A stretch of 64,000 bases of DNA from Macrostomum lignano (lineage: Eukaryota). Shown piece by piece: positions 873-46,922 of the stretch. Position 1 is the first letter of the stretch. Every line of letters begins with the position of its first letter. A program made the translations under genes and the position numbers. The stretch lies in contig NIVC01003286.1 of assembly GCA_002269645.1 (NCBI GenBank), positions 1 through 64,000 on the forward strand. Reading direction: 5' to 3'. Under the pieces are notes generated by a model, which searched no databases, was not told the origin of the DNA, and saw nothing but the letters and a program-made list of their open reading frames with translations.

Positions 873-3800
873 ATGCAGCTCTTTCAGTTGCGAGTTTCTG
901 CAGCGTTGGCTCTGCTGCTCTGCTCGCTGGCAGCCGGCCGCCAGGTCTCCCAGTGCGCTCCCGCTGACTCTCCGCGGCTCCGCTTCGTGGCGCAGCTCAG
1001 CGTGAACGGCTGCGCGCTGTTCGTGCACGACACGGGCGAGCGAGCGACGGTCCGCACTTGGCAGTCGAGCCGCTCATGTGCGTGACGGACAGCCTGAGAG
1101 GCATTGTTCCCCGATTCGACTTCATCACACAGCAGCTGTACTTCAGCGTCCTGTATTGATGAAGGATTCTGGAATGCTCGCAGAGGCTCAGCGTCAACTA
1201 CGGCATCTGTCACCGAGGTCTGTGAGCTTCGCCACGGTGACCAACATCAGCGTCTCAGCCGACAGCCGCTCATCGGTTCGGGTTTTGGGCTTCCCGTGGA
1301 CTCCAAATGAGTCAGTAGCCACTCTGAGACTCGGCTTCGGAGAGAAGATCACATATGAAGCCCTAAATCTACGAGCAAGCATGCTGGGACTGGCGAATAT
1401 CGACCAATTGACCAAAGTTTTTCTGTTACCAAACACTCATATAAGCAGACGAAATAAAATTGAAAATTCAACAATCGAGACTCTAAAAAATGTAAAACTC
1501 TCAGCTACTCTTCTGTCGAATGGCTGTTTCCATGAGGTTCAGAGCCGCATCATGCTGCAAAACGACAGCTTCATCGAAGTCGGCTTGTACAGGAAAAAAT
1601 TCTTACCCGTGTGCCAACAGCTGCGGTTCAGTCGGTACGTCAAACTCGAGAACTGCTCTGTCCGAGTGCACCAGAGACTCGACATCAAGGGCCACTTCCT
1701 CATTGAGCCTCTGCTGTGCCACAACATCTCCAGCTTGAGCAGCGAGTCAGTCAGGTATGACTACAGCCGAGACATGCACTACCTGAAGCTGGATCTAGTG
1801 CTGCAAGATGAGGCCACACGCGATTCTGTGAGGACTCAGTTGGCCGACTTGTCGCCTCGCTCGGTCGACTTCATGCGGCTGTGGACTGCTGAGAGATCAG
1901 TGAGCTCTTCGTTGAGTGCTCGGTTTGAGGTCGGTCCGCTGATGGCGTCGACAGACTGGAGGTCCGCTCAGCTGCGGCTGCTCTGCGGAAACTGGACGGA
2001 GTGCCGCGATCTCAGGTTGGCTGACATTTTCTAAGACATGTGGCAGAAGGTCTGACAATTCGTTCACCGTAATCAAAAACTTTAGTGCTGCTTTTGAGCT
2101 GCTCTTTTCTGGACTGCTTCTTACAGCTTTAGGGAGACAAAAATACTTTTTTAGCATGAGTTTGGAAGCAGAGGATATTTGATTAGGTAAGTTTTAGCTG
2201 GCTCGAATTCCTGACGTAAATATCGCATAAGCACACATTGCACAGTTGTAAAGTTTATACGAGCGTAAAATAATTGAATGTCTGCGGCATCACTACATTC
2301 TAATATCATATACCAGGCATTATTGGCTTTAAAAACTTGCTCTGACTTTTCTGTTTCATTCCTTCGTAGCACAGTGCCGTTAAAAAAGTAATTGACGACT
2401 TCCAGGGCTGCTGTGCTGGCGGAGCCCGCTGACCTGTGGCGACACGTGCAGTGGCGGGTGACGTCGCTGGTTGCTGAGCAGTGCCTTTCCAAGTACAGCC
2501 AAATCACTTCATCATGGAGAATGAAAGCGCTTGTAAGCGAGAGCTGCTACAGTCTGAAGTCCTGCGCCAGGCTGCAATGCGCCTCTGCTCAACGCACAGC
2601 GAACTCTTCCAGTGCGGTTCAACTGCAGCCAGACGGTCGCTGCTTCGTGAAGATTCAGCAGCGACTTACTGGCAGAGTGAGTTTCCAACGAAACTGGACT
2701 GAGTACGAGACTGGGTTCGGTGACGGCACTGACTTCTGGATCGGTGAGCGGCAGTTTTGAGTCAACTAATGTTGTGTGACGAGAGAGGTAGCAGATTTTG
2801 TGAATCTTATATTGAAATGCTAGTTGACTCATAAGCTTTCAAATGACAAAAGATGAATTGAAAGGTTAGCTTCTCGGCTAATTAAAGGAATGTTAACTTT
2901 CAGTTGCGCCATGACTGCAATGCTCTACATTGACCTTTCCCGCCTTATTGGCGTTTCGGGCTCTCGGCTGGCTTCAGTGAGTCAGGAGGCTACTGTCATT
3001 ATTTTCAACGAGCTCACCAAAAGATATTGATGAGATTCTCTAGTCTCAGGAAGTTTGGGATAATTTGCTCTAGTCTGTCTTTTACACGGCCAGGACCCCT
3101 AATAGCAAAAATAGTGTGTTTCAGTTAGCAAAAAAGTTTATCCAGGAGTTGTCAATGAAAAGGATTTGGACTCTCCATCCAGACAACAAAATTTTCGAAA
3201 AATAGAAGTCCCAAAACTAATCTGACGCGAAAAGCAGTAGAAAGCAGTTTAGTCCATTACCAGCTGTTCGAACAAAAAACTTGGGCTTGCTGTGTTGGCC
3301 ATTACAGTGCATTTGCTGAAATGAAGCAGCACCAGCCAGAGCAGCAACAAACTTCATTGTGCATTCCCAAGTTCGGCACTGTAGCACTCCTAGACTCCTA
3401 GGCATTACCCTGGACCGTACGCTCAGCTTTAACGCGCACGTCAACGACATCTGCAGCAGAGTCCTGTCCCGCTGCCGCATGCTGTCCTGCCTCGCGGCTC
3501 GGGACTGGGGTTGGCGCAAGGAGCGCCTTCGCGGCGTCTACCTGGCTATGCAGCAGAGCCTTCTTAACTACGCGGCCCCGGCTTGGCAACCTTGGCTTTC
3601 CAGCTCCTCCTTCGAACGCCTTGAGCGCGCGCAAAACCAGGCCCTCAGAATCGTCACGGGCTTGCACCGCTCGGCGCCGCTTGACGCTGTGCACCTGGAG
3701 GCCGGCATCGGCAGCTACAGGAACACCAGCGACCGCCTTTGCCTCATCGCCAGGGAACGCGCGCTCAGGCTGCCCAACGACCATCCTCGCGCCATCGCCC

Positions 3801-5891
3801 TCTCGGGCACCGTGCAACACCGGCTCGCCCGCAGTAGCTGGAGACTCCGCTCGGCTCAGCTCGCCAATGGCCTTGGCATTGATCTCACGCCGCGTTTGCC
3901 GCTCACACCGGCCTTTCCATGCCCCTGGCTGGACCAACATCTCCCGGCGATCCTAGCTGACAATCCTTTGCCTCCGGCCACCACGCCCCGTTGGAGCGCT
4001 GTCTTGCCGCTCTTGACGTCATCCGGTCTCACCCGGCTGAGCTCGTCATATACTGCGACGGTTCGGCGGCCGGCGGCTCCGAGGCTGGCGGGGCGGCCGC
4101 TGTGGTCACCATCGGAGACCCGGCAGTCCCGACGAACGTAAAAGTCCGCACGGCCGCTGGCAGCCGCTACACCAGCTCCTTTGAAGAGGAACTCCGCGCT
4201 CTGGTCCTAGCGCTCGACTACCTCCGCTCGCATCCCACGCGCTCTGCCATCATCTGCTCTGACAGTCAGTCTCTTCTGCGCGCCCTTCAGCGTCCCTTCA
4301 GCCGCCTGGCCTCTTCTCTCCGCTTCCCGCACAACTGTCGCGCCCTCCTGTGGGTCCCGGGTCATGTCGGCATTCCGGGCAATGAACTCGCGGACCGCGC
4401 TGCTAACTCCGCTGCCGCCATCGCCGATGAAGCACCGCGCCCCAGCATCAGTTTTCCCACTGCCGCCTCGGTGATCCGCCGCACTCTGGCGGACAAGCCG
4501 GTCACCCACGCGAGATCTCGTCTCACCTACGCCTCCGCCGACGCCGACAAGGAACGTCGGCTTATTACTAACCGCAAAGACGCTCTCCTTCTTGCCCGGC
4601 TGCGCTCCGGCCACTCCAGCCTCTTCGGAGCCTTCCGCGCCCTCATGGACCCCACGGTGGATCCGACCTGCCAAAAGTGCTCCCTCGAACCAGACACCCT
4701 TGAGCACTGGATAGCGTGCCCTGCTCTCGAGGCCGCCCGCCGTCGCTTCATTGGAGCTCCGATCTCCCTCAGCAACTTGTCCGATTACCCTGATGGTTTG
4801 GTCGCGCTGGCCAGGTTCTGTATGGATCCTGGGCGCGTTTGGGTCATCTAACAACAACAACAACAAGAGCAGCAACAGTCATGGCTTCATCAGCCGACTC
4901 AGTTCTTCAGCTGCTCTTTGCAACTGACTGACTGTTAAATCATTTTTACATTTTTCATTTTCAGCTTTGAAGCTTAAATTATTTTTTCCGTCGTATTATA
5001 TATAGTATCGACTTTTTGAGACGATAAACACTGCTGTACTTCGTCTTCCGATGCGAAGATCTGCTTCCCACTGGTCAATCAACATCCCCATCCCCGCAAA
5101 AATCGGTGCATATAGAAAATTTTGCGTTTATTTCTATGCAGACCAGTAAGCTTGGTCATGCAGCCAATTCTTTAACTAAAAAGTTGCACTGTCTATGGTA
5201 TGTATAAGATGAATGGCCTCATGACAGCCTTCTGATATATGCATGAAGTGCATGTATTGCATAGTTTGTAAAAGTCTGACTTGCGTGAAAGTTTTTCAAA
5301 GAATTCCGCTTGCGTAAGCGGCTCAAAATGGATCATTTAACCTTGCAATAAGCCTATTTATCTTTAATATCTGCTTTATTAAAACGCGTATTTAGTTTTT
5401 TTACATTTTCGTTAACATATGAATTGCGACGAGCCGAGCAGAAGTGACTCAGACTCAGCCGCTCTCCTCCCGCAGGTCTCTCCGCCATCCACTCGCTCAG
5501 CCAGGGCGGCGCCACCCTCAGAGTGGAGATGAAGCTGTGGAGCGGCTCTGAGCTGCATGCGGAGTACGCAGGATTCCAGGTGGGAGACGCCAGCACTGGG
5601 TATCGGATGACGTACCGAGAGATGCTGAGCCACAGGTCCAGTGTCAGCTGGAATGCTCTGGAGCTCAGCAAAGACATGCGGTTCTCCACGATGGACAGGG
5701 ACAATGACATATGGGGTGCTTCGTGCTCAAGCCGTTATGGAAAAGGAGGCTGGTGGTTTAAAGACTGCCATCAATGCAACCCTAGCGGACGCTTTCCTAG
5801 GCGAGACACACCAGATTCCAGATATATGGTCTGGTACTCTGGCTCTTTCTGGCTGTCTCTTCGTGAAATGTGGCTGCTGCTGCAGATTTGA
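873..5891 (+). pseudogene. Secreted fibrinogen-related protein, copy 1 (frameshifted in exon 1; pseudogene or assembly error)
   Basis: Exons 873-2015, 2406-2743, 5476-5891 with GT-AG boundaries and matching phases (AG|G = Arg; G|GT = Gly, giving FWIG-LSAIH). Signal peptide MQLFQLRVSAALALLLCSLAAG; FReD motifs FQRNWTEYETGFG, FSTMDRDND, GGWWF. Relative to copies 2/3: extra CG at 1037-1038 and one T missing near 1149 (net +1), splitting exon 1 across ORFs 732..1085 and 1078..2034. Confidence 0.75.
3350..4865 (+). mobile_element. 5'-truncated non-LTR retrotransposon (I-group-like): RT C-terminus, RNase H, Cys/His motif
   Basis: ORF 3359..4141 (RLLGITLDRTLSF; YAAPAW) and ORF 3991..4851 (IYCDGS, SDSQS, WVPGHVGIPGNELAD, CQKC...EHWIACP); (CAA)n tail directly after the stop; 12-bp TSD AGAGCAGCAACA at 3338-3349 and 4866-4877. 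Lies in intron 2 of FReD copy 1. Confidence 0.9.
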
Positions 5892-6202
5892 GCAGCAAAA
5901 TTGAGCAACTAAACAACGCACTTTGCTTATTAAAATAAACCTTTCATCGAATCGGATTTTAACTAAAGTGTTTTTTTCAGCAATAACAAGCATGCCTTTG
6001 CAAATATGTAACTACAAAACAATGCAGTCTAAAATTTCACTGATTGCAAGAGTTTTAAAGTTAGTGACAGAAACTTTTAAATTTGCGAGGTTAAACTCAA
6101 TAAACCAAAGTTAATAGAGGCAAACTATTTTCAACAATAAACTAACAAGAAAAGGTTAGCAACTAATCTACCAATCTACTGCTCTAACTGTCCTGTGTTT
6201 TT

Positions 6203-6638
6203 TGTTCTATCAGTACTGTGCTGTCTGTTCTATCAGTATTGTGCTGTCTGTTCTATCAGTACTGTGCTGTGTGTTCTATCAGTATTGTGCTGTCTGTTCT
6301 ATCAGTATTGTGCTGTCTGTTCTATCAGTATTGTGCTGTCTGTTCTATCAGTATTGTGCTGTCTGTTCTATCAGTATTGTGCTGTCTGTTCTATCAGTAT
6401 TGTGCTGTCTGTTCTATCAGTATTGTGCTGTCTGTTCTATTAGTATTGTGCTGTCTGTTCTATCAGTATTGTGCTGTCTGTTCTATCAGTACTGTGCTGT
6501 GTGTTCTATCAGTATCGTGCTGTCTGTTCTATCAGTATTGTGCTGTCTGTTCTATCAGTATTGTGCTGTCTGTTCTATCAGTATTGTGCTGTCTGTTCTA
6601 TCAGTATCATGCTGTCTGTTCTATCAGTATTGTGCTGT
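6203..6638. repeat. 23-bp minisatellite (TATTGTGCTGTCTGTTCTATCAG)n, ~19 units
   Basis: Direct reading; same unit as arrays at 30003-31101 and 35527-35722. Confidence 0.95.
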
Positions 6639-6899
6639 TTTTTAGGTTTTTTCAGAGTTATGACATAATTTATGCAAGCAGACGCGCTCCATGGAACTTC
6701 ACTTACCTGTGGGTCATTTCGGAGCCGCACTGAGTTGTCTGAGTCGCAACGCAAGACGCATCGGGGGAGCAAAGTCTTCAGTTTAGAGTTCGCCTGCCAA
6801 GGCCTCATCAGGGCTGCTGAAAACACCGCTTCCATGACAGAAAGCCCAGCTCGCATTGCTGAGATTGACCCGAGTCCAGCACGCGCTGGTATTGCAAAT

Positions 6900-7945
6900 C
6901 TGACGACTGCTTGCTGGCATCCAACCGCAGAAACACAGGCGAGTTGACGTTTAACAGTTTCACACTTTCACACGCTGCTTCACGTTGGTGAATGATGCCT
7001 TGACAGCCACTCTGTAGTCAAACACGCGCTCCACTTTACGAAGTTCCTGCAGAGGCCGCCAATTTTCAGCAAAGTTGGGAAGAAGTCGCCTTCAGAGCTG
7101 CAAAATCCCCACACCGGTCGAGATCCTTCCTGCTTCTCATAGCTTCTACATCCTAAATCATCTGCACCAATCCCGGATCCGGCCTTATCCTCTCCTCATC
7201 GATGATGTGGCCCAGGAACTTCAAACTGCTGGCCTTTTTAATGCACTTCGCTTTGTTGATTTTCACATTAGCCTCTCTCAGTTTGTCCAGCATTTTCTCT
7301 CCGATATTCTAAAGCTCCGCCTTCGACACCGCTCCACGAGCACATCATCCTAATGTACGATGACACTTAGGTTGCTCACCCAGCAGCTTCTTCATCTCGC
7401 GCTAAAACACTGACGAAGACAACTTGATGCCGTACGGCAGCCTGTTAAAAGGGTAGCAGCCGAAAGGTGTGTTGACGGTGGTGATGTTCTTTGACTCATT
7501 TTCCAGCGGAACCTGCTAGTAAGCGTTAGACAAGTTCACTCGGCATAACAACATCATCTTGTTTGCCGTGTTTGAGAATGCTGTCTCGATTGACGGAATC
7601 AGATACGTCTGATCCTGCAACCACTTATTGATGGCAGCTTAGTCTCCGCAGATCCTCACGGAAATCTTTTCGGACTTCATCGTCACTGCTATTGGACTGT
7701 CCCACTTTTCAACAGGATCTCGCCAACTGCTCCCTTGATGACCAACAAGCTCTCGTAACTGTTGCTGCTGGAAAGCTGGCATCATCCGAATGGTGAGCAG
7801 GGAGCGAGCTGAGAAGATCTCAGCTGAGTAACCCAAGTTCTGCTCGTCTTAGATGACTGGCAGCTCCTCCGCCGCAACGAAGCGGCCATCAGAGCCAGTC
7901 TTCACCAGGCATTCCGGCATGACCGTCCTACACAAGCATCTGAGA
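6900..7945 (-). mobile_element. Degenerate Ty3/Gypsy pol fragment (RT to start of RNase H)
   Basis: Minus-strand translation with stops: PIAVTMKSEKISVRICGD, NLSNAY*QVPL, TVNTPFGCYPFNRLPYGI, LKFLGHII, FLRLDASK. Confidence 0.75.
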
Positions 7946-7951
7946 CTTTTG

Positions 7952-8444
7952 TTTATTTTATTTTAGTTTTTTGTATTTTAGTATAGTTTATTAGTTTAGT
8001 GTAGTATAGTATAGTATAGTATAGTTTAGTTTAGTTTAGTTTAGTTAAGTATAGTTTATTTTAGTTTAGTTTAGTTTAGTTTAGTATACTATAGTTTATT
8101 TTATTTTAGTAAGGTATAGTTTAGTTTAGTTTAGTTTAGCTTAGTTTAGTTTAGTTTAGTTTAGTTTAGTATAGTATAGTTTAGTTTAGTTTAGTTTATT
8201 TAAGCTAAGTATAGTTTATTTTAGTTTAGTTTAGTTTAGTTTAGTTTAGTTTAGTTTAGTATACTATAGTTTATTTTATTTTAGTAAGGTATAGTTTAGT
8301 TTAGTTTAGTTTAGTTTAGTTTAGTATAGTATAGTTTAGTTTAGTTTAGTTTAGCTTAGTTTAGTTTAGTTTAGTTTAGTATAGTATAGTATAGTATAGT
8401 TTAGTTTAGTTTAGTTTAGTTTAGTTTAGTTAAGTTTAGTATAG
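7952..8444. repeat. (TTTAG)n/(TATAG)n pentanucleotide microsatellite
   Basis: Direct reading; abuts the 3' end of the LINE at 8445. Confidence 0.95.
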
Positions 8445-13116: not shown

Positions 13117-13411
13117 GAACGAAAAAATTTTCCGGCAAGGAACAAATCCCACATTAGAAGTTCCACATCTAAAGCAAACTGGCTATCGCAATAAACCGGC
13201 ATCGTATAGAATTACCTAAAAGTCGATGCACAAGAAAACACTGCGTGTAGTGCAGATTGAACCAATCTGAAAACACAAACTTAGACACAGTTCGCATTGC
13301 AGACTGCAACAACAAAGCCCCAGAACTTTCGAAAGGTCATCCAGCACAAACAGAAACTCCCGCAGCAAGGCAGGTAAAATTGATGCGCTGCATGGCGTAA
13401 ATGTTGCGAAT
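13117..13411 (+). other. Remnant fourth copy of the FReD gene upstream region (continues at 17800-17838 after the LTR element)
   Basis: Aligns by eye with ~300-595 (TTTTCCGGCAAGG...CACAGTTCGCA...GCAAGGCAGGTAAAA...CATGGCG); sequence after the Gypsy element (GACGCATGTAGTGCCTCGGGAT) continues the match to 597-625. Confidence 0.8.
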
Positions 13412-18871: not shown

Positions 18872-18911
18872 AAGAGCTCGCCTTAGCACACTAGTGAGAC
18901 GGAAAGAGAGA

Positions 18912-19238: not shown

Positions 19239-19239
<1 letters not shown>

Positions 19240-19920: not shown

Positions 19921-21681
19921 TGAAACTTGGAGGTGAAACTTGGGTTGCAATTGGGTTAAAATTCACCATACTTGTAAATTCTAAAAATACACTTGTAGAT
20001 GATGCAAACCTGTTTTTTGAAGTATAGAATGATCATTAGCTGTTTTCGTGATATTACTGGTATCAAGAAAGGTAGCGAATGACGCATGCTATTTTGAAAT
20101 TTATATTCGTATTTTTATCTTACTACTCTTAGTAGTCTGCTAGGTTTGGACATATCTACACATCTGGCCTAAGCTGTTCTGTCTCATGTCCTGTCTACAA
20201 GAATTTAGTCGTCAGTTCTCTGGAACCTCAAAAATATTGAGCGATTCTGCCAGAAGGTCGGAATTGATCCATCAGCACCAGTGAATTGAATAATCCACTT
20301 TGCGTCAATCAGCACTGCGTCTCGGTGTGTCGTTGCCAAGCCTCCCTATTTTATCACAACGCCAACCGCATGTGTCTGCAACAGCTCTGGCTTTGTTGAT
20401 AACTGGAATTTACACTGGCGGAGCTTCTGGATCTTCAACAGTGCCACAAACAGACTATGGATGCCGTCGTCTGTGACGTCTCAGATCAAGAGTCAACGGA
20501 GGGCAAACCCGAACTGCTTGGTGTCCTTACCTACTTGTAGTATCTCAAGCATTCGGACATCATCCAGAAACCGTTGGTACCTTCAGCCGACTGCACCAGT
20601 AGACTATGTACGTTTTGCTTGAAGTTGCACAGCGAAATAAATGCATTTTGTGCATTGTTTCGAACGCGAGATCCTCTCTGCGTAAGAATTCAGTTTACAC
20701 TTGATGAAACTGAAAAACTTGCCAATTAATTATTTGCTAGATGGATAACAATGCATTCAAAATTACTTATAAGAATATAATTCAATAATATGACACGTGC
20801 TTAGTTTTACTCCTCATGAATTAAATAGTTTTAATAGCTTCAGAAATGAAAAAGATATGATGAAAAATCTCAATTAGGTGTAGCTGCTGGTTGCAACCCG
20901 TCGAAGAAGCCGAAGGCATCAGCGTGAAGGCTACATGCAATTACCTGGGAGTCTGGCTAAGGTTGTCCAGCAGTTGAGATTTGCCCGTTATTGAAGCTTG
21001 ATAATAAAAATGCTGACATGGCGCAGTGCAGATTGGCGCACGAAGGTGAATGAATACAACAACGCTAATGGTAGGAATCAGACAAAAACTATGAAAAAAA
21101 GGGAAAAAACTCAGAGGGCGAATTCTACTCTTGGTAATTTTACGGGTAAACTCGGGTGTCTCCAGAAATCTGTATTACATAAAATTATCAAGAACATCTT
21201 AGCACTTCAAGATAGCACTTCATGAGCTGCAGATGAAAGAACGACCCAAGCTAAAAAACACCGTATTGAAGCTTAGACGAAGTTCGCATTGAAGACTGCA
21301 ACAACAAAGCACCAGAACTTCCGAAAGGTCATCCAGCACAAACAGAATGTCCTGCAGCAAGGCAGGTAAAATTGATGCGCTGCATGGCGCAAAGGTTGCG
21401 AGTGACGCATGCAGTACCTCGGGATTCCAGACACTGTCTGGCAGAGATAAAAGTGCATTTAGTCACGAGATTCTGGCCAACCGAATCCCCAGCTGAGGCA
21501 AACAGTCTGATGCAAATGGCAAACCGCGTGACGCGTCTGGAATGCCAAGTGCAGCCTGCAGTCACGTTAAATTTATCCCATGGGCAGGGAATGCTTCTTC
21601 TCTATATAAATGCAGCCATTTTACAGGATGCAGCTGCAATCCCAGATTACCGATACAACAACGAAAGGTGAACTTGACTCG

Positions 21682-24600
21682 ATGCAGCTCTTTCAGTTGC
21701 GAGTTTCTGCAGCGTTGGCTCTGCTGCTCTGCTCGCTGGCAGCCGGCCAGGTCTCCCAGTGCGCTCCCGCTGACTCTCCGCGGCTCCGCTTCGTGGCGCA
21801 GCTCAGCGTGAACGGCTGCGCGCTGTTCGTGCACGACACGGGAGCGAGCGACGGTCCGCACTTGGAAGTCGAGCCGCTCATGTGCGTGACGGACAGCCTG
21901 AGAGGCATTGTTCCCCGATTCGACTTCATCACACAGCAGCTGTACTTCAGCGTTCCTGTATTGATGAAGGATGCTGGGATGCTCGCAGAGGCTCAGCGTC
22001 AACTGCAGCATCTGTCACCGAGGTCTGTGAGCTTCGCCACGGTGACCAACATCAGCGTCTCAGCCGACACCCGCTCATCGGTTCGGGCTTTGGGCTTCCT
22101 GTGGACTCCGGATGAGTCAGTAGCCACTCTGAGACTCGGATTGGCAGAGAAGAACACATATGAAACTCTACATCCCGAAAACATAGTTCTAAGACTTCTG
22201 AATATCGACTCAATGAGAACCTTACTAATTCAAAGTACCCAGACGCGGATCGTCGAGAAAAAAAATGAAAGTTCAATAATCGAGACTCTAAACAATGTAA
22301 AACTCTCAGCTACTCTTCTGTCGAATGGTTGTTTCCATGACATTCAGAGCCGCATCATGCTGCAAAACGACAGCTTCATCGAAGTCGGCTTGTACAGGAA
22401 AAAATTCTTACCCGTGTGCCGACAGCTGCGGTTCAGTCGGTACGTCAAACTCGAGAACTGCTCTGCCCGAGTGCACCAGAGACTCGACATCAAGGGCCAC
22501 TTCCTCATCGAGCCTTTGCTGTGCCACAACATCTCCAGCTTGAGAAGCGAGTCAGTCAGGTATGACTACAGCCGAGACATGCACTACCTGAAGCTGGATC
22601 TGGTGCTGCAAGATGAGGCCACACGCGATGCTGTGAGGACTCAGTTGGCCGACTTGTCGCCTCGCTCGGTCGATTTCATGCGGCTGTGGACTGCTGAGAG
22701 ATCGGTGAGCTCTTCGTTGAGTGCTCGGTTCGAGGTCGGTCCGCTGATGGCGTCGGCAGACTGGAGGTCCACTCAGCTGCGGCTGCTCTGCGGAAACTGG
22801 ACGGAGTGCCGCGATCTCAGGTTGGCTGACATTTTTTTAGCAAGGTTTGAGGTTTCATACACGTAAAGTCTAAATTAGTTTTTATCCTTTTTTTTGCTTT
22901 AGACTCAACAGATTTTGATGTTAGCGCGAATACGAGCTAAAACTAAGGTAGCAGTTGGGTGCAGAGTAGGTTTGAATGGATACGTTTCTGATGGCCCGAA
23001 TTCCTGACCTTATAAATGCGGTAGCACGCATGGCAAAAGTGCTAAAATTTACATGATAATTATATGCTGGCGGCATCGTTACTCTACTACTTTATACCAA
23101 GACAGTGAAAAGACGTGAATGAAGTAAATGTAGTCTTCAAGGGTGGGAAGATTCGATATTTGCTTTTTACTTTGCTGTTTGGTAGGGGCTTTGATCTAAT
23201 GCATTTTCAAACAGTATTGACAAACAAGCTGTTGAAACCCGCGGATTTTGAACCGGGGAATTCCAATCCCCGAAACTCTTTTTGCATGCATTCTAAAATC
23301 TGAGGTCATACTCAAACAAAAACTTGTTAATAGTTGGGATAGAGGTGAACATAAAATAAAGTACATTCTTGTGGTTTTAAAATTATATAGGATTTGAGGC
23401 AAACATTGATACTGCGCAGAATGTCAGGCAATGTCTATCTGACTCTAAACTCTGACCTCTTGCCTCTGCCTCTCCCTACGTGCCTTGGATCCTTTGAAAC
23501 TTCCATCTTCTTTTCTGTTTTCTTTTATTCTCTCTCCTCTCTCCTCTCTCCCCTCTTCTCTCGTCTCTTCCCTCTCCTCTCTATTCTTTTCTCTCTCCTC
23601 TCATCTCTTTTTCTCGTGTTTCTGTTCTCTTATCTCTCCTTTCCCTCTTTTATCTCTTCTGATTTCTCTCTGCTCTATCTCTCTCTTATCTCTCCTTTCA
23701 TATCTCTGCTCTCTGCTCTCCCATCTCTTCTCCTTTCGACTATTTCCTCTCTTCATTCTCCCTTTTCTCTCATCTCTCTCCCTTCCCCTCTTTCCCCTGG
23801 TTCTTGATTCTCTACCCTCCTCTCTCCTCACTCACTTCTATCTCACTTTGTCTCACCTCTCCTGTCTCATCTCTTCTCTCTTCTCTCCTATCTCTCCTCC
23901 TTTCTCTCTATTTTTCCATCTCTAATCTGTTCACTCTCGTCTCTGCTCTGCACTCTTCTTTCCCCACTTTTGACTGCTATTTTTCCTTTCTTCTCTTTTA
24001 TTCTCTTCCCTCTTCTATACTCTCTCTCTAAAAAGCAGCCTAACTTTAAAAGCGCACATCGCTATTCAGGATTAACCTTTAAACTTGAAATTTCACACGA
24101 TTGTGTCAAAAGTTCAAGATTATTGTCTGTGTCAAATTTAAAGAGGATTAATAAAAGTAGAGCGGCGCTAAGGAGGATTTAGTGAAAAATCCTGCTTTTC
24201 TAGCAGTTTTTTGGTTTTTTAAGTAGAAAGACTTAGACTTAGGAAATTTTAAGGTAAGCCTAAGACATTTTCCGTAGTGAGTTCAGGATGGGTGCAAAAG
24301 TTGGTTTGATTTGCTTGAGCGGTTTGGGCGTCCATAGCGATCAAAATTGTACACAGACAGCCACACAGACACACAGACAGACACACAGAGAGACACACAG
24401 ACAGACACAGACAGAGTTTTGATTTTTATAGTGATGTAACCGCCCTTGTCGCCGGTCCGCTCCGATTGAGAGACGAACGCTTGGCTAGAGGGGGCAATGA
24501 CCGTAGGCTGCCTATGACCGGGCAATGACCTGACGGACCTCCAGCACCAGACTGTCCCGCCCACATGATTGATAGCTTTGGTAGCGCTTTGTGACAAGAG

Positions 24601-27600: not shown

Positions 27601-29379
27601 TTTTTTAAAAACGAAACCCAAATTTTGAGAGATATGCCTCTCAAAATTGCACGAAAAAGTCCTAGCTCGTACTTTTAGAGTGCACGTAGCCAGCCCTGTC
27701 AAAAGTGAATTTTAGCTATCGCTTGTCCTTCTCGCTGCGGTACGGGCTAAGTTAAAAAGCCAATTTTTCGACGTGAAAAACACGTTTCTGTACTTTTAGC
27801 CCCGAAGATGAAGTGCAAAAATTAAGTTAACATCATTTCAGAGTTTGAATGCCCGCCGCTCGCTAAGCGCTGCCATATTTTCCCGCCGCTAAATTAAGAT
27901 CATAGTTTTTTAAAATGTCTAAAAACGCGTTGTCATGGCAATCAAACAGTGCTTTTGTCTTTGACGCATTTAAGCTAAAAACCGTTTGTAAATCGATCAT
28001 GCCATTTAAAAATGCCAACGTTTAAAATTTGACAAAGTTGACTTGTGATGTGTCAATCTGTTGCACGTCTTACCAGGGACAATTTTTTTTCAGAAAGACA
28101 TGGCATTTCTGGCTCAATCGTCAAACAATAGTATTTTGCGTACATACGTAGTGAGATTTTGAATTCATTCGAAATAGTTGTTTTAAATGCGTGCTCATTT
28201 GTATTTTTGTTCTTTTCATTCCTTCGTAGCCCTGTGCCGTTTAAACAAGTAATTGACGACTTCCAGGACTGCTGTGCTGGCGGAGCCCGCTGACCTGTGG
28301 CGACACGTGCAGTGGCGGGTGACATCGCTGGTTGCTGAGCAGTGCCTCTCCAAGTCCAGCCAAATCACTTCATCATGGAGAATGAAACCGCCTGTAAGCG
28401 ACAGCTGCTACAGTGTGAAGTCCTGCGCCAGGCTGCAATGCGCCTCTGCTCAACGCACAGCGAACTCTTCCAGTGCGGTTCAACTGCAGCCAGACGGTCG
28501 CTGCTTCGTGAAGTTTCAGCAGCGACTTACTGGCAGAGTGAGTTTCCAACGAAACTGGACTGAGTACGAGACTGGGTTCGGTGACGGCACTGACTTCTGG
28601 ATCGGTGAGCGGCTTGTCAATTGGTGTGCGTCAGGAACTGAAGCAGGTCTTATCAACTGCCATGAGAGTGTCATTTAGGCCGTACAATTGATAACGTTCG
28701 TTGGTTGGTGGCTGTGGAAATTTAATTCTTCGAACCGCCCTGCAGCTAAGTGGAAATTTTAGCAAAACTTTTTTTCCTAGCATGCTGAGCTGCATCAATA
28801 GAATTCATTGGCGCCTGAATCCAGACTGCCTGCGCAAGTCAGGCCCAAAATTATGGAAAATATATTTTCATCAATTTTGAGTCACGACTCACCTGACAGC
28901 AGCGGCGACAAGCCGAGCAGAAGTGACTCAGACTCAGCCGCTCTCCTCCCGCAGGCCTCTCCGCCATCCACTCGCTCAGCCAGGGCGGCGCCACCCTCAG
29001 AGTGGAGATGAAGCTGTGGAACGGCTCTGAGCTGCATGCGGAGTACGCGGGATTCCAGGTGGCAGACGCCAGCACTGGGTATCGGATGACGTACCGAGAG
29101 ATGCTGAGGGACAGGTCCAGTGTCAGCTGGGATGCTTTGCAGCTCAGCAAAGGCATGCGGTTCTCCACGATGGACTGGGACAATGACGTATGGGATGCTC
29201 AGTCATGCTCAAACACACTCGGAAATGCAGGTTGGTGGTTTCATTACTGCCGCCACTTCAACCCTAATGGACTTTATCCTTCGCAAGAGAAGGTAGATAT
29301 AATTGGCAATATGGTGTGGTACATTTCTTATAGTAAGAAACTGTCTCTTCGTGAAGTGCGGCTGATGCTACAGATTTGA
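21682..29379 (+). CDS. Secreted fibrinogen-related protein, copy 2 (intact, 633 aa): signal peptide, two tandem unknown domains, FReD
   Basis: Exons 21682-22820 (1139 nt), 28267-28604 (338 nt), 28955-29379 (425 nt); GT-AG introns in phase 2 and phase 1; total 1902 nt open; FReD motifs FQRNWTEYETGFG-FWIGL, FSTMDWDND, GWWF..C...NPNG. Confidence 0.85.
23400..24030. repeat. CT-rich low-complexity tract in intron 1 of copy 2
   Basis: Pyrimidine-rich degenerate (CT)n; its ORFs are S/L/F-rich artefacts. Confidence 0.85.
24432..26657. mobile_element. 2.2-kb solo LTR (or non-coding LTR-type insertion)
   Basis: TG...CA ends with 10-bp terminal inverted repeat TGATGTAACC/GGTTACATCA; 4-bp TSD ATAG at 24428-24431 and 26658-26661; no retroelement ORF inside. 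Confidence 0.8.
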
Positions 29380-41460: not shown

Positions 41461-42346
41461 GAGTTCAATACTGTTTATTAATTTTTTTATTACTAAAATA
41501 CAATAGATATGGCTGGTTTTATGTAATAAAACACACAAATAATACGATAAACAATCACTACCGAGGGTCCAGACGAGCGCAGTTGCCTTGTTGCCATGCC
41601 TTCAAGAGGCCGACGGCGTCACCCTGATGACAGACTGAATAAGAGTCTTGCTGAGGAGGTACCAGCCGTTGAGGTTTTCTCATTATTGAGATTCTGACAT
41701 GGGCGTAAAGGGGTGCATTAAATACGCCGGCGCCCATGGGAAGAATCCGAAAATCCGGAAAATTTGTTCGGGATGAGAGGAAAATCAGCGTTAAAAGTTT
41801 TAATTCTAAAACAACCCCGATATCTAAAGATACCCGAACTATCAATAATTACCTGTATTACCTGAATTACCTGGGCCAATGTACAAGATAATACGGCTTG
41901 CGCTGCAGATTGAAAAAAATCTGAAAAGACCAACTTTGACACAGTTCGCACTGCAGACGAAAAAAAACAAAACGCAAAAAATTTTCGTCACGACATGCAG
42001 TGTAAACAGAAACTCCTGCAGCGAGGCAGGTAAAATTGATGCGCTGCATGGCGCAAAGGTTTCGAGTGACGCATGCAGTGCCTCGGGATTCCAGACACTG
42101 TCTGGCAGAGATAAAAGTGCATTTAGTCACAGGATTCTGGCCAACCGAATCCCCAGCTGAGGAAAACAGTCTGATGCAAATCCCAAACCGCGTGACGCAT
42201 CTGGAATGCGAAGTGCAGCCTGCAGTCACGTGAAATTTATGCCATAGGCAGGGAATGCTTCTTCTGTATATAAATGCAGCCATTTTACAGAATGCAGCTG
42301 CAATCCTCGGATTACCGATACAACAACGAAAGGTGAACTTGACTCG

Positions 42347-45300
42347 ATGCAGCTCCTTCAGTTGCGAGTTTCTGCAGCGTTGGCTCTGCTGCTCTGCTCG
42401 CTGGCAGCCGGCCAGGTCTCCCAGTGCGCTCCCGCTGACTCTCCGCGGCTCCGCTTCGTGGCGCAGCTCAGCGTGAACGGCTGCGCGCTGTTCGTGCACG
42501 ACACGGGAGCGAGCGACGGTCCGCACTTGGCAGTCGAGCCGCTCATGTGCGTGACGGACAGCCTGAGAGGCATTGTTCCCCGATTCGACTTCATCACCCA
42601 GCAGCTGTACTTCAGCGTTCCTGTATTGATGAGGGATGCTGGGATGCTCGCAGAGACTCAGCGTCAACTGCAGCATCTGTCACCGAGGTCTGTGAGCTTC
42701 GCCACGGTGACCAACATCAGCGTCTCAGCCGACACCCGCTCATCGGTTTGGGCTTTGGGCTTCCTGTGGACTCCGGATGAGTCAGTAGCCACTCTGAGAC
42801 TCGGCTTCAAAAGGATTGTTGTCAAGACCGATTCAAGTAAAGCTTCAGGTTCAAGAATTTTACAGGAAAGTTTACCTCTCCAGTTTTTTCAATCAGTGTA
42901 TAACCAGCTGAAGCGCAGTGATGACTTTGGAAGCTCACCACAAGAGGCTCTTGAAAAGGTGAAGATATCAGCTTTTATCATTTCAAACGGATCTTGTCAT
43001 GAGGTTCAGAGCCGCGTCATGCTGCAAAACGACAGCTTCATTGATGTCAGCGTGTACAAGCAAAAATTCTTACCCGTGTGCCGACAGCTGCGGTTCACTC
43101 GGTACGTCAAACTCGAGAACTGCTCTGCCCGAGTGCACCAGAGACTCGACATCAAGGGCCACTTCCTCATCGAGCCTCTGCTGTGCCACAACGTCTCCAG
43201 CTTGAGCAGCGAGTTAGTCAGGTATGACTACAGCCGAGACATGCACTACCTAAAGCTGGATCTGGTGCTGCAAGATGAGGCCACACGCGATGCTGTGAGG
43301 ACTCAGTTGGCCGACTTGTCGCCTCGCTCGGTCGACTTCATGCGGCTGTGGACTGCTGAGAGATCGGTGAGCTCTTCGTTGAGTGCTCGGTTCGAGGTCG
43401 GTCCGCTGATGGCGTCGGCAGACTGGAGGTCCGCTCAGCTGCGGCTGCTCTGCGGAACCTTTACGAAGTGCCGCGATCTCAGGTTGGTTGGAATTTTCTG
43501 AGGGGTTTTCAGCTTTTATTGCACCAGATTCAAAAAAGAGTTTACTTTCTAGACTCTCTTTACTTCACAGGACTTCTTGAGTGTTTGCAAGAGTAATACA
43601 AAATCCCTTTTAGTGTCAGCTTGGTTGCTATTGAGCGATCAGATCAGGCTATCAATGCTTTTGTATTGGTTTTTTTTTCTTTTTTAAATTTTTTTGGCGT
43701 TCAAAAATGGATTTGACAATATCCAGGTCTGCTGTGCTGACGGATCCCGCTGACCTGTGGCGACACGTGCAGTGGCGGGTGACGTCGCTGGTTGCTGAGC
43801 AGTGCCACTCCAAGTCCAGCCAAATCACTTCATCATGGAGAATGAAAGCGTCTGAAGGTGCAGTCAGCTGCTCCAGTCTGAAGTCCTGCGTCAGACTGCA
43901 CAGCGCCTCTGCTCCACGCACAGCGGCGTTTCAAATCCTGCCAGACGGTCGCTGCTTCGTGAAGTTTCAGCAGCGACTTACTGGCAGAGTGAGTTTCCAA
44001 CGAAGCTGGACTGAGTACGAGACTGGCTTCGGTGACAGCACTGACTTCTGGATTGGTGAGCGGCGTTTGTGTATCAGCTAATATTGTGTGACGGAGGGTT
44101 GGTAGCAGATCTTGTTAATCTTATGGTGAAATTATGGTTGATTCATGCACTTTCAACTGACGTAATACGGACTGAAAGATTAACTGCCCGGCTAAATAAA
44201 AAAGTTAAGTTGAAATTGCGCCATGATGGCAATCGTCAACACTGGCCTTTTCCGCCTGATTGGCGTTTCGGGTCCTTGTTTTTGGTCCTTGGTTTTTTAT
44301 ACAGCTAGGACTATCAATGCCAAATAGTTTTTTTCAGATGACTAAAATGTCATCCAGGATTCATCAATGAAAAGTATTTGACACTCCGTCCAGACAACGA
44401 AAATGTCGAAAAATGGAAGTCCCAAAGCTACTTTAAAGCATAAGGCAGTAGACAGCGGTTCAGTCCAGCCAGAGCAGCACCAGCCAGAGCAGCACCAGCT
44501 AGAGCAGCACCAGCCAGAGCAGCACCAGCCAGAGCAGCACCAGCCAGAGCAGCACCAGCCAGAGCAGCACCAGCTTCTACGAGTACAACCATCGTTGCAG
44601 TTTTTGCGTATATTTCTATGAAGTTTACATAAAAAACCTTGTTCCCCGACTCAAAACATTAGCTAGTAAATTTTGCGCTGTTCACGTCACGTATAATATT
44701 AATGGCCTCATGAGGCCTTATGATAGATACATGGCGTACTTAAGAAAGGTTAGAACTTATTGACTTATAAAAAAAATCCAAAAAAAATTCCTTTCGTGCG
44801 CGCCCTTCTACGAGATATTTATCTGAGTCGCAGTCAAGTTTCCGAAGCGATGCATTCAGATGACATTTCGCTTCAGTCCTGGCCTGATACAATTAAAACC
44901 CGTCTTGAAGTCTCAGAACAGCCGGCCACTCATCTGGGATATCAGAAGACTTTGAATGGATAATTTAGTCAGTAAACGAATTTAGCTGCACCATCTGCTA
45001 TGGAACGCACATTGTAAAAAATTTATCTCAGGATCCAAATGACGAATCACCTGACAGCAGCGGCGACTAGCCGAGCAGAAGTGACTCAGACTCAGCCGCT
45101 CTCCTCCCGCAGGCCTCTCCGCCATCCACTCGCTCAGCCAGGGCGGCGCCACCCTCAGAGTGGAGATGAAGCTGTGGAACGGCTCTGAGCTGCATGCGGA
45201 GTACGCTGGATTCCAGGTGGGAGGCGCCAGCACTGGGTATCGGATGACGTACCGAGAGATGCTGAGGGACAGGTTAAATGTCAGCTATGTCGCTTTGGAG

Positions 45301-45531
45301 AACAGCAAAGGCATGCGGTTCTCTACGATGGACAGGGACAATGACGTACACAGAGGAATCTCATGCTCAAACAGATGGGGAAAAGCAGGCTGGTGGTTTA
45401 ATGCTTGTCTACACGTCAACCCTAACGGACTTTTTCCTTCGCGGGAGACAACAGATGGCAGCTATATCGTCTGGAACTCTGGCTCTGTCTGGCTGCTTCT
45501 TCGTGAAGTGCGGCTGATGCTGCAGATTTGA
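42347..45531 (+). CDS. Secreted fibrinogen-related protein, copy 3 (intact, 627 aa)
   Basis: Exons 42347-43482 (1136 nt), 43727-44055 (329 nt), 45113-45531 (419 nt); GT-AG introns in the same phases as copy 2; total 1884 nt open. Confidence 0.85.
44464..44575. repeat. 15-bp minisatellite (CAGCCAGAGCAGCAC)n in intron 2 of copy 3
   Basis: Direct reading, ~7 units. Confidence 0.9.
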
Positions 45532-45909
45532 GCATCAAAAATTGAGCAACTCAGTGGCGCACCCTGTTAATTCAGATACTGATTTTTTGGACTTAAGCCA
45601 AAAATTATTGGGAGACTAACAAGCCTGCTGCTGCTAATTATTACCTGCAAAACATGGATTTATACGTCTCCCTGATTGCAAGAGTTTTACTGACTGAAAA
45701 CACTCGAGCGCATAAAAAGTGAAACCAATATTTATACTCAATAAACTCATTTTAATAGACGCAAACTTTATAAATAAGCAAATTATAAAAGGCTGAATAC
45801 TTCAACTAAGAAATCTGAGCAGCTACTCACTTTATTCATACGGCCAAATGCTCGAGAATTTCTTTTTAAATTCGTTTTTTACACTGAAATTTTAGTAATG
45901 ATTTTTTAT

Positions 45910-46323
45910 GAGCACCAGCCAGAGCAGCACCAGCCAGAGCAGCACCAGCCAGAGCAGCACCAGCCAGAGCAGCACCAGCCAGAGCAGCACCAGCCAGAGC
46001 AGCACCAGCCAAAGCAGCACCAGCCAGAGCAGCACCAGCCAGAGCAGCACCAGCCAGAGCAGCACCAGCCAGAGCAGCACCAGCCAGAGCAGCACCAGCC
46101 AGAGCAGCACCAGCCATAGCAGCACCAGCCAGAGCAGCACCAGCCAGAGCAGCACCAGCCAGAGCAGCACCAGCCAGAGCAGCACCAGCCAGAGCAGCAC
46201 CAGCCAGAGCAGCACCAGCCAGAGCAGCACCAGCCAGAGCAGCACCAGCCAGAGCAGCACCAGCCAGAGCAGCACCAGCCAGAGCAGCACCAGCCATAGC
46301 AGCACCAGCCAGAGCAGCACCAG
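45910..46323. repeat. 15-bp minisatellite (CAGCCAGAGCAGCAC)n, ~27 units
   Basis: Direct reading. Confidence 0.95.
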
Positions 46324-46602
46324 TCGTGGCAGCACCGGCCGACTCAGTTCTTCAGCTGATGCTTGCAACTGACTGACTCAAATTAATTTTGTCTTAGACT
46401 TCTCCTTACTTCTTCTTTACCTTAGATTTTTTCATTTAGTCAAGTTTGCGAACAGAAGTATTTAGATGACATTTCGCTTCACTACTGACCTGATACAATT
46501 AAAAACCCGTCTTGCAATCTCGGAACAGCTGGCCGCTCAGCTGGGATATCGGAATGCTTATAATGGATAGTTTAGGCAATTAACAAATTTTAATTTAGGC
46601 AA

Positions 46603-46922
46603 TCCAGGTAGGAGACGCCAGCACTGGGTATCGGATGACGTACCGAGAGATGCTGAGGGACAGGTCAAGTGTCAGCTGGGATGCTTTGGAGCTCAGCAAA
46701 GACATGCGGTTCTCCACGATGGACAGGGACAATGACGTATGGGATGCTGGTTCATGCTCCAATAAATATGGAAAAGGAGGCTGGTGGCTTAAACGCTGCC
46801 ATCAATTCAACCCTAACTGACTTTATCCTTCAGGGGATTTAGCACATCACAGGAATACGGTCAGGCACTCTGGCTCTGCCTATCGAACTTTTCGTGAAAT
46901 GAGGCTGATGCTGCAGAGTTGA
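46603..46922 (+). pseudogene. Degenerate extra FReD terminal exon
   Basis: Homologous to exon 3 from ...FQVGDASTGYR onward; splice acceptor and first ~95 nt missing; in-frame TGA at 46818-46820 where copy 2 has GGA; preceded by intron-2-like sequence (46465-46570 vs 44865-44965). Confidence 0.8.

What the first reader, a model, noticed from the sequence alone, without database searches (positions are those of the whole stretch)
873..46922. Tandem family of secreted fibrinogen-related proteins with an unrecognised doubled N-terminal domain
Seen: the ORF track splits these genes. Splicing CTCAG|GTTGG to TCCAG|G (phase 2) and ATCG|GTGAG to GCAG|G (phase 1) joins the long exon-1 ORF to two FReD exons in all three copies, giving 627-633-aa proteins (signal peptide, domain X, linker, domain X', FReD). 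Established: FReD proteins such as ficolins, tachylectin-5 and snail FREPs (IgSF domains plus FReD) act as innate recognition lectins and occur in diversified clusters. Inference: this is a FREP-like architecture with a different N-terminal module, and the cluster shows birth-and-death turnover (two intact copies, one frameshifted, one promoter remnant, one orphan exon). It is a candidate lineage-specific immune or adhesion receptor family.
Basis: partly seen in the sequence, partly recalled or inferred. Interest (0 to 1): 0.85.

Follow-up and report, generated by a model that had tools for sequence, protein, structure and literature searches.

The report
Flatworm lectin genes with novel domain
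This stretch of Macrostomum lignano (flatworm) DNA holds a tandem cluster of genes for secreted fibrinogen-type lectins whose front half is two copies of a protein domain found in no domain or structure library, a module the same animal also attaches to C-type lectin heads.

Summary
Copy B (21682-22820 / 28267-28604 / 28955-29379) and copy C (42347-43482 / 43727-44055 / 45113-45531) splice with GT-AG introns, phases 2 and 1, into 633-aa and 627-aa proteins. Each has a signal peptide, two copies of "domain X" and a C-terminal fibrinogen-related domain (Pfam E 2e-34). Copy A carries two frameshifting indels. A 133-bp 5' remnant and a stop-containing partial exon 3 also exist.

The window is Macrostomum lignano. 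These proteins are already in UniProt/GenBank as uncharacterised "Fibrinogen C-terminal domain-containing protein".

New here:
- Domain X is a unit of about 150-170 aa with no Pfam or PDB sequence match.
- Its AlphaFold model is confident (pLDDT 92.6) and has no PDB fold match.
- X' runs across intron 1, and the "linker" is the degenerate tail of X plus a spacer.
- The same domain occurs six times in M. lignano C-type lectin proteins.
- A phase-2 intron sits at the same spot in almost every unit.
- Conserved blocks are homogenised (dS 0.01-0.07), while two blocks, one in the ligand-binding subdomain, are strongly diverged (dS 0.25-1.1).

Best reading: a diversified family of secreted recognition lectins, analogous to snail FREP/CREP. 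Function is inferred, not shown.

The parts
464..872 (+). Copy A upstream region (start of the duplication unit, including a conserved TATATAAA about 75 nt before the ATG)
   Evidence: 92% identical to 21269-21681. TATA box conserved in A, B and C.
873..2015 (+). Copy A exon 1 (signal peptide, X, spacer, most of X'). Frameshifted by +GC at 1036-1037 and a missing T after 1148.
   Evidence: Three-copy DNA alignment. Premature stop at 1083-1085. Otherwise open.
2406..2743 (+). Copy A exon 2 (end of X' and the first part of the FReD)
   Evidence: cttccag|GGCTGC ... GGATCG|gtgagc. tblastn 94% to copy B.
3359..4851 (+). Retroelement fragment (RNase H and reverse-transcriptase-like ORFs) inserted in intron 2 of copy A
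   Evidence: ORFs. Pfam RNase_H E 1.7e-12.
5476..5891 (+). Copy A exon 3 (FReD B/P subdomains, stop codon)
   Evidence: cccgcag|GTCTCT. tblastn to copy B residues 493-633.
13277..13409 (+). It starts at the same boundary as copies A, B and C and is cut off next to an LTR retrotransposon.
   Evidence: 91.7% identical over 133 bp to 21269-21401. Integrase and RT-RNaseH ORFs at 14037-15545 on the minus strand.
21269..21681 (+). Copy B upstream region, TATA box at 21603-21610
21682..22820 (+). Copy B exon 1. Signal peptide is residues 1-22. X core is residues 36-164 (nt 21787-22173). Variable block 1 is residues 151-245. X' begins at residue 250 (nt 22429).
28267..28604 (+). Copy B exon 2. The last ~21 residues of X' reach nt ~28327. 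A Cys-rich junction follows. The Pfam FReD match starts at nt ~28481.
28955..29379 (+). Copy B exon 3: FReD B/P subdomains with the Ca2+-site motif DWDND and the Cys pair. Variable block 2 is residues 546-633.
41934..42346 (+). Copy C upstream region with conserved TATA box
   Evidence: 94% identical to copy B upstream..
42347..43482 (+). Copy C exon 1
   Evidence: Public model P0012 has the same C-terminal part.
43727..44055 (+). Copy C exon 2
   Evidence: atatccag|GTCTGC ... GGATTG|gtgagc.
45113..45531 (+). Copy C exon 3
   Evidence: cccgcag|GCCTCT ... TGA.
46603..46922 (+). Orphan, 5'-truncated exon 3 (matches copy B residues 526-632) with an in-frame TGA; a pseudogene fragment
   Evidence: BLASTN 87.8% to 29054-29282. 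tblastn 67%. Sequence read. Public model P0013 wrongly fuses it to copy C.
47029..47162 (+). 3'-flank fragment that belongs with the orphan exon
   Evidence: 76% identical to 29381-29508.

Best explanation
The region is a tandem, transposon-riddled cluster of three-exon Macrostomum lignano genes. There are two intact copies, one with two frameshifts, and two fragments.

Each intact gene encodes a secreted protein built as follows: signal peptide, two copies of a previously undescribed alpha/beta domain of about 150-170 aa ('domain X'), then a C-terminal fibrinogen-related domain (FReD). The FReD keeps the Ca2+-site motif and the P-subdomain disulphide.

Proposed working, which is inferred rather than shown: the FReD is a Ca2+-dependent lectin head that binds acetylated or glycan ligands. 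The X array is a conserved chassis (stalk, self-association or partner-binding module) that this lineage also puts under C-type lectin heads. It moved between genes by exon shuffling, because nearly every X unit is split by a phase-2 intron at the same internal position.

Paralogues are kept nearly identical over most of their length, most simply by gene conversion. Two blocks stay strongly diverged: the tail of the first X domain, and the loops of the FReD P subdomain around the ligand pocket. This gives a repertoire of heads with different specificities on a common scaffold. It is a functional analogue of the snail FREP/CREP (VIgL) recognition lectins.
For: Shown:
- Gene models and open frames.
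- FReD: Pfam E 2e-34. Alignment to ficolin-1 conserves FST-D-x-D-N-D, the Cys pair and NxNG-Y.
- The N-terminus fits the (-3,-1) signal-peptide rule (AAG|QV) and no other hydrophobic segment is present (sequence).
- Internal duplication: E 9e-12.
- Domain X recurs in 38 instances across 16 proteins. These include six units followed by a Lectin_C domain in P0022 and P0032, and one unit plus a FReD in P0027.
- Single-domain AlphaFold model: pLDDT 92.6, pTM 0.85.
- Phase-2 introns at the homologous site: window intron 1; both X units of P0011 and P0015; five resolved introns in the X6-C-type-lectin gene; both units of environmental contig L003.
- Purifying selection over long distances: omega 0.14-0.48 for X, X' and FReD against P0011 and P0015.
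- Mosaic divergence among A, B and C: dS 0.01-0.07 in conserved blocks, against 0.3-1.1 in residues 151-245 and 0.25-0.41 in residues 546-633.
- Nearest neighbours differ from block to block. Column identity drops to 0.19-0.5 in those blocks.
- Other loci are tandem too: L005 holds P0015, P0011 and a third, degenerate copy.
- Public RNA-seq-guided models join the exons.

The FREP/CREP analogy rests on PMC5433772.
Against: - No expression site, induction or binding data could be found.
- Among the three window copies, overall dN/dS is 0.8-0.9 and never clearly above 1. Diversifying selection is therefore suggested, not demonstrated, and relaxed constraint on young duplicates would look similar.
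- The FReD A subdomain is atypical. The Pfam match starts at profile position 35, and 'GGGW' is replaced by DGR(C/W).
- No collagen, coiled-coil or other known oligomerisation element is present.
- Gene conversion is inferred from the dS mosaic only.
- 'Lineage-restricted' may partly reflect poor sampling of other macrostomid flatworms.
Confidence: 0.6

Rival explanations
1. The same proteins, but acting in reproduction or secretion (seminal fluid, the sperm-female tract interface, eggshell or adhesive glands). In this reading, rapid divergence of the variable blocks is driven by sexual selection or conflict, not by pathogens.
For: The family is known only from Macrostomum-like organisms. It is tandemly amplified and shows fast-evolving blocks with dN/dS near 1. 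From general knowledge, lineage-specific, rapidly evolving secreted proteins are typical of Macrostomum reproductive tissues. The mainly somatic expression expected of an immune lectin has not been shown.
Against: Nothing in the sequence points to a reproductive tissue. Well-studied invertebrate examples of FReD and C-type lectin heads on a shared scaffold are humoral recognition lectins (PMC5433772). No paper linking these genes to reproduction was found.
Confidence: 0.2
2. Extracellular-matrix or signalling FReD proteins, like tenascin or angiopoietin. Here the FReD engages a cell-surface receptor, the X domains are matrix spacers, and the variable blocks are simply unconstrained.
For: The best PDB sequence matches include angiopoietins and tenascins as well as ficolins. 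There are multiple N-glycosylation sites and Cys-rich modules (sequence).
Against: The coiled-coil or EGF/FN3 context of those families is absent. Many near-identical tandem paralogues that differ mainly in the P-subdomain loops fit a ligand-diversified lectin better than a single-receptor ligand.
Confidence: 0.12
3. The joined model is an annotation artefact. In this reading exon 1 encodes a stand-alone X-X' protein that ends at the in-frame stop 15 codons past the donor, and the FReD exons belong to another transcript or are decaying.
For: A read-through stop exists shortly after each exon 1 donor. Intron 1 of copy B is 5.4 kb and full of repeats.
Against: X' is incomplete without the first ~21 residues of exon 2. 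Intron position and phase are conserved across paralogues, across the C-type lectin genes and in an environmental relative. RNA-seq-guided public models join the exons. The FReD exons are under purifying selection.
Confidence: 0.03

Closest known systems
Biomphalaria glabrata VIgL lectins: FREPs (one or two IgSF domains plus a FReD) and CREPs (IgSF plus a C-type lectin)
   Same: Secreted. One or two copies of a non-lectin N-terminal module followed by a C-terminal FReD. The same N-terminal module is also used with C-type lectin heads. Multigene and clustered, with paralogue diversification. (PMC5433772; window data.)
   Different: The N-terminal module is not IgSF: there is no Ig Pfam hit and no significant fold match. 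No interceding coiled-coil region. The intron logic differs (a phase-2 intron inside each X unit). Somatic diversification and parasite binding are untested. The C-type lectin version has six modules rather than one or two.
Ficolins and tachylectin-5 (FReD recognition lectins)
   Same: The FReD has the Ca2+-site motif, the P-subdomain Cys pair and an NxNG-Y segment, about 30% identical to ficolin-1 over ~170 residues. Presumed to bind acetyl groups or glycans.
   Different: No collagen-like stalk or short N-terminal Cys segment. The A subdomain is atypical. One residue is inserted next to the pocket Cys-His in copy B (CRH instead of CH).
M. lignano 'C-type lectin domain-containing proteins' PAA78696.1 and PAA72931.1 (P0032, P0033) and their 49%-identical homologue from SRR30276812 (P0022)
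   Same: They contain the same domain X (six units, domain E 1e-32 to 1e-50), with the same phase-2 intron after the C-x-x-L motif.
   Different: The head is Lectin_C rather than FReD. They are ~1440 aa and have no hypervariable tail in the first unit. They are not encoded in this window.
Uncharacterised protein A0A7S7YF07 of Medusavirus stheno (predicted structure in BFVD)
   Same: The only significant fold match to the domain-X model: Foldseek E 4e-4, probability 1.0, TM 0.60 on the query, 169 columns.
   Different: 15% identity, unknown function, a giant virus of amoebae, and a predicted rather than solved structure. Whether this reflects homology or convergence is unknown.

Membership tests
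Fibrinogen-related domain (FReD, Pfam PF00147) proteins | Significant match to the Fibrinogen_C profile above the curated cut-off | tested here: met
   119.7 bits (copy B) and 122 bits (copy C) against a cut-off of 22; E 2e-34 and 4e-35. 68 PDB FReD chains matched at E<=0.01, best 2.6e-22.
Fibrinogen-related domain (FReD, Pfam PF00147) proteins | P-subdomain Ca2+-site motif (D-x-D-x-D) and the flanking conserved Cys pair | tested here: met
   FSTMDWDNDVWDAQSC...GWWFHYC aligns with ficolin-1 FSTKDQDNDVS-SSNC...AWWYADC. F, S, T, N569, C577 and WWF are invariant across the 10 paralogues aligned.
Fibrinogen-related domain (FReD, Pfam PF00147) proteins | Canonical A subdomain (N-terminal Cys pair, CDM...GGGWTV) | tested here: inconclusive
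   The Pfam match begins at profile position 35 of 221. 'GGGWTV' is DGRCFV or DGRWFV. Conserved cysteines C406, C427 and C433 lie upstream, but their pairing is unknown.
Snail-type FREP / VIgL family | One or two IgSF domains N-terminal to the FReD | tested here: not met
   No Ig-family Pfam hit at E<=1. The high-confidence domain-X model has no PDB match better than E 0.057 or TM 0.27. It is alpha/beta, not an all-beta sandwich.
Snail-type FREP / VIgL family | Somatic diversification and binding to parasite glycoproteins | not testable with these tools
   This needs sequencing of individuals or single cells, and binding assays.
Ficolins | Collagen-like (G-X-Y)n region N-terminal to the FReD | tested here: not met
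   No G-X-Y repeats in the 633-aa sequence and no Collagen Pfam hit.
Domain X family (defined here; no name in any library) | A unit of about 150 profile positions with the signature C..L+F...GC..VH......EP(L/F).C ... Y..L.V.L.D ... SV.F ... LRL.C.....C..L, then a helix and a strand | tested here: met
   Both halves of copies B and C match the iterated profile: X 36-164 at E 2e-49, X' 250-400 at E 3e-65. The 34-row alignment has E38/P39 nearly invariant.
Domain X family (defined here; no name in any library) | Phase-2 intron immediately after the C-x-x-L motif | tested here: met
   X' of A, B and C: ECRDL|R, phase 2. The site is also conserved in P0011, P0015, L004 and L003. In the window genes the equivalent intron of the first X unit has been lost.

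The most novel reading that the evidence does not exclude
Domain X is a new extracellular fold restricted to macrostomid flatworms. It serves as the common scaffold of a lineage-specific, germline-diversified recognition system. The scaffold is shuffled through symmetrical phase-2 exons onto either FReD or C-type lectin heads. It carries two separately diversifying surfaces (the tail of the first X and the FReD pocket loops), which are kept distinct while gene conversion homogenises everything else. This would be an independent invention of the snail FREP/CREP solution using a different building block.
Probability: 0.2. Interest if true: 0.8.

Novelty: new variant of a known kind. Interest (0 to 1): 0.55.

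Why it matters
FReD and C-type lectin expansions are a recurring form of invertebrate innate recognition, but almost nothing is known about this in free-living flatworms. M. lignano is a transgenic, RNAi-amenable model.

This family would give three things:
- A well-defined, undescribed domain with a confident model and no solved relative. It is a candidate for a new Pfam entry and a structure-determination target.
- A clean example of domain shuffling by same-phase introns, linking two lectin classes.
- A compact system of a few tandem clusters in which to test whether mosaic gene conversion plus protected variable blocks produces functional diversity in ligand recognition. This parallels the snail FREP/CREP lectins that matter for schistosome transmission.

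If the genes turn out to be reproductive, the family would instead be a tractable case of sexually driven lectin evolution.

Tried and rejected
- Modelling the whole N-terminal region (357 aa, 8 close paralogues) gave pLDDT 49.7. Its Foldseek hits (IgE-Fc, adaptin ears; E>0.004, TM<0.2) were discarded as meaningless. Stacking X and X' units from all relatives into a 34-row single-domain alignment solved this.
- SEA or ferredoxin-like, Ig-like and other known extracellular folds were considered for domain X. None reached significance in Foldseek against PDB (best E 0.057; a ferredoxin-like dimer at TM 0.43 on the target, probability 0.6), nor in profile-versus-PDB or Pfam searches.
- The word-indexed protein search with the domain alignment returned only three already-known fragments and added nothing.
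- Literature and supplement searches found nothing about this family. They covered Macrostomum with fibrinogen, fibrinogen-related or C-type lectin, and the locus tags Mlig011340, Mlig019144, Mlig006328, Mlig015699, Mlig024225 and Mlig010465. The M. lignano adhesive and gut proteins that mention C-type lectin domains are different genes.
- A clear dN/dS above 1 was looked for in the variable blocks and not found. Values were 0.4-1.0, with dS partly saturated.
- Whether copy A is a true pseudogene could not be decided. Its two indels lie in a GC/GA dinucleotide run and a T run, which is typical of long-read assembly errors, and no further stops have accumulated.

Full report
**What is in the sequence**

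- Copy B joins 21682-22820, 28267-28604 and 28955-29379 into a 1902-nt open frame of 633 aa.
- Copy C joins 42347-43482, 43727-44055 and 45113-45531 into 627 aa.
- All introns are GT-AG. Intron 1 is phase 2 and intron 2 is phase 1.
- Copy A (873-2015, 2406-2743, 5476-5891) has the same sites. Its exon 1 carries a +2 insertion (GC at 1036-1037) and a 1-nt deletion after 1148, so the frame from the ATG stops at 1083-1085. With those two indels set aside, the remaining 631 codons are open.

A self-comparison of the window shows the duplication unit three times: 464-6154, 21269-29549 and 41934-45791. It also shows a 133-bp solo copy of the unit's 5' end at 13277-13409, next to an LTR retrotransposon. 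A 5'-truncated exon 3 lies at 46603-46922 with an in-frame TGA, and its own 3' flank lies at 47029-47162. A TATATAAA box about 75 nt upstream of the ATG is conserved in all three copies.

**Whose genome, and is this already known?**

A search with the mature exon 1 product returned 19 proteins, all from Macrostomum lignano. They are named only 'Fibrinogen C-terminal domain-containing protein' or 'hypothetical protein BOX15_Mlig...'.

- P0004 is copy B's product with an internal deletion.
- P0012 is copy C's product.
- P0013 wrongly fuses copy C to the orphan exon.

The window is therefore M. lignano, and the spliced architecture is already present in public gene models. The BOX15 models come from the Mlig_3_7 annotation, which was built from a genome-guided RNA-seq transcriptome (PMC5730564). 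That counts as transcript-level support for joining exon 1 to the FReD exons. I found no paper that discusses these genes.

**The C-terminal half**

Pfam finds Fibrinogen_C at residues 452-631 of copy B (E 2e-34) and at 448-611 of copy C (E 4e-35). The best solved relatives are fibrinogen alphaE, ficolin-1, -2 and -3, angiopoietins and tenascins.

The alignment with ficolin-1 keeps FST-D-x-D-N-D (the Ca2+ site), the Cys pair that frames the pocket loop, WW(F/Y) and N-x-N-G-x-Y. The A subdomain is atypical: the Pfam match starts at profile position 35, and GGGW is replaced by DGR(C/W).

**The N-terminal half: domain X**

The two halves of exon 1 are homologous (BLASTP E 9e-12, 30% identity over 102 aa). 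Pfam has nothing for them.

An exhaustive HMMER scan of 1.84 billion representative proteins with a profile of the N-terminal region found only 13 clusters. All named members are from M. lignano. One comes from an unnamed transcriptome (Logan SRR30276812) and one from a JGI metagenome contig.

The hits fall into three architectures:
- More X-X-FReD proteins.
- A protein with a single X followed by a FReD (P0027).
- Proteins of ~1440 aa with six X units followed by a C-type lectin domain (P0022, P0023, P0032, P0033; Lectin_C E 1e-9 to 1e-11).

Iterating a profile over 16 proteins gave 38 domain instances of about 151 positions each. In copy B these are residues 36-164 and 250-400.

- X' continues about 21 residues into exon 2, so it is split by intron 1.
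- The 'linker' (151-245) corresponds to the C-terminal C-x6-C/helix/strand part of X plus the inter-unit spacer. In this subfamily that part has lost its cysteines and become hypervariable.

**Structure**

A model of the whole N-terminal region was poor (pLDDT 49.7), and its fold matches were noise.

Using the 34 stacked single-domain sequences (mean identity 24%) as the alignment, AlphaFold modelled copy B residues 240-413 at pLDDT 92.6 and pTM 0.85. The result is an alpha/beta domain with eleven strands and three main helices.

- Foldseek against 350,542 PDB chains gave nothing better than E 0.057 and TM 0.27 on the query.
- The domain profile against PDB sequences gave nothing.
- Against predicted viral structures there was one significant match, an uncharacterised 417-aa Medusavirus stheno protein (E 4e-4, TM 0.60 on the query). 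I could not follow this up.

No AlphaFold DB search was possible. 'No solved relative' is therefore shown, while 'new fold' is not.

**Intron logic**

I reconstructed exact exon structures for relatives.

- In paralogues P0011 and P0015 (61% and 47% identical to copy B, tandem neighbours on contig NIVC01001149.1) there are four exons. Phase-2 introns follow the 'L' that ends the C-x-x-L motif in both X units, and a phase-1 intron follows DFWI. The last two are the window's introns 1 and 2. The first has been lost in the window subfamily.
- In the X6-C-type-lectin gene (L004), introns 3-7 are all phase 2 at exactly that position in successive X units.
- An environmental contig (L003) encodes signal peptide-X-X with phase-2 GTGAGT donors at the same two positions.

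Symmetrical 2-2 exons of about 190-225 codons explain how units multiplied and how the array came to sit in front of two different lectin heads. The same data are strong independent evidence that intron 1 of the window genes is real.

**Evolutionary pattern**

Against the distant paralogues, omega is 0.14-0.48 in X, X' and the FReD, so these are constrained coding sequences.

Among copies A, B and C the picture is mosaic:

| Region | dS among A, B, C |
|---|---|
| X, X' and FReD A/B | 0.01-0.07 |
| Residues 151-245 (variable block 1) | 0.3-1.1 |
| Residues 546-633 (variable block 2) | 0.25-0.41 |

In the two variable blocks dN/dS is 0.4-1.0.

Protein identity across ten paralogues is 87-97% in the conserved blocks within the close subfamily, 33-80% in block 1 and 54-68% in block 2. 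The nearest neighbour differs between blocks. For example, copy C's block 1 is closest to P0006, while its block 2 is about equidistant from all the others.

Because synonymous sites show the same contrast, the simplest explanation is gene conversion homogenising most of the gene, while two blocks escape or are exchanged as cassettes. Block 2 covers the P-subdomain loops around the Ca2+ site and pocket, where FReD lectins bind ligand. Positive selection is not demonstrated.

**Interpretation**

- Shown: real, conserved, secreted-type multi-domain FReD genes in a turnover-prone tandem cluster.
- Shown: a new, modular domain shared with C-type lectin proteins.
- Shown: conserved same-phase introns.
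- Shown: mosaic divergence concentrated in the lectin pocket region.
- Inferred: Ca2+-dependent glycan or acetyl binding by the FReD.
- Inferred: a scaffold, self-association or partner-binding role for X.
- Inferred: a recognition repertoire analogous to snail VIgL lectins, in which IgSF modules carry FReD, C-type lectin or galectin heads (PMC5433772).

It is not a member of the FREP/VIgL family, because the defining IgSF domains are absent. It is not a ficolin, because there is no collagen region. A reproductive role is the main rival and cannot be excluded without expression data. The exon 1-only artefact reading is effectively excluded.

**Verdict**

The genes themselves are already deposited but uncharacterised. 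What is new is the definition of domain X, its confident model without a solved relative, its use with two lectin heads, the intron-phase logic and the mosaic pattern. I rate it a new variant of a known kind (FReD recognition lectins), of moderate interest (0.55).

Noticed in passing
window 22100-22350 (copy B exon 1); equivalent sites in copy C and in paralogues: Three public gene models (P0004, P0009, P0013) splice from different internal GT donors to one internal acceptor just before 'SR[IV][ML]LQNDS' (AG at 22346-22347 in copy B). Each removes all or part of hypervariable block 1 in frame, like an exitron. This could be real alternative splicing or a prediction artefact.
   Followed up: partly
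structure model m295504318953 (copy B residues 240-413): The only significant fold match to domain X is an uncharacterised 417-aa protein of the giant virus Medusavirus stheno (A0A7S7YF07; E 4e-4, probability 1.0, TM 0.60, 15% identity). Nothing in the PDB matches.
   Followed up: no
L005 (NIVC01001149.1), 6698-16176: A second, very compact tandem cluster of the family. P0015 and P0011 are ~2.1-2.2 kb genes with introns of ~70-280 bp. A third, degenerate copy follows (X-X at 13437-14582, FReD fragment at 15712-16170). These genes retain the X-unit intron that the window genes have lost.
   Followed up: partly
L002 (NIVC01003268.1) against window 10192-13114 and 19142-22154: Another M. lignano contig carries a paralogous or homeologous locus. 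Its flanks are 93-96% identical to the window. Its gene (P0002) resembles copy B at the 5' end of exon 1 and copy A in the remaining exons. This fits recombination or conversion between copies and the known redundancy of this genome.
   Followed up: partly
window 6202-6733 and 29893-31226: The same long minisatellite follows copies A and B, so it is part of the duplication unit. It reads through as 'CCLFYQYCAVCSISIVLSVLSVL' in three frames. Copy C is followed instead by a different short-period repeat at 45866-46372. Further simple-repeat arrays lie at 18367-18894, 23394-23925, 48347-48892, 57592-58091 and 59695-60319.
   Followed up: no
window 8545-11756 (-), 13557-17238 (-), 31223-35338 (-), 37287-40453 (-), 60568-63996 (-): The spaces between the gene copies are filled with retroelements. 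These are: a non-LTR element (RVT_1 plus RNase_H); two or three LTR/Gypsy-like elements (RT_RNaseH, rve, Integrase_H2C2); and an element with a reverse transcriptase next to a weak tyrosine-recombinase (Phage_integrase) hit, as in DIRS-like elements.
   Followed up: partly
window 51348-51665 (-): An exon-sized ORF encodes part of a 3',5'-cyclic nucleotide phosphodiesterase catalytic domain (PDEase_I, E 2.7e-35). An unrelated gene therefore lies on the minus strand downstream of the cluster.
   Followed up: partly
window 21610-21681 (and the same region in copies A and C): An in-frame upstream ATG extends the ORF by 24 codons (MQPFYRMQLQSQITDTTTKGELDS...), and some public models start there. 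The signal peptide only makes sense from the ATG at 21682, which lies about 75 nt downstream of the TATA box.
   Followed up: no
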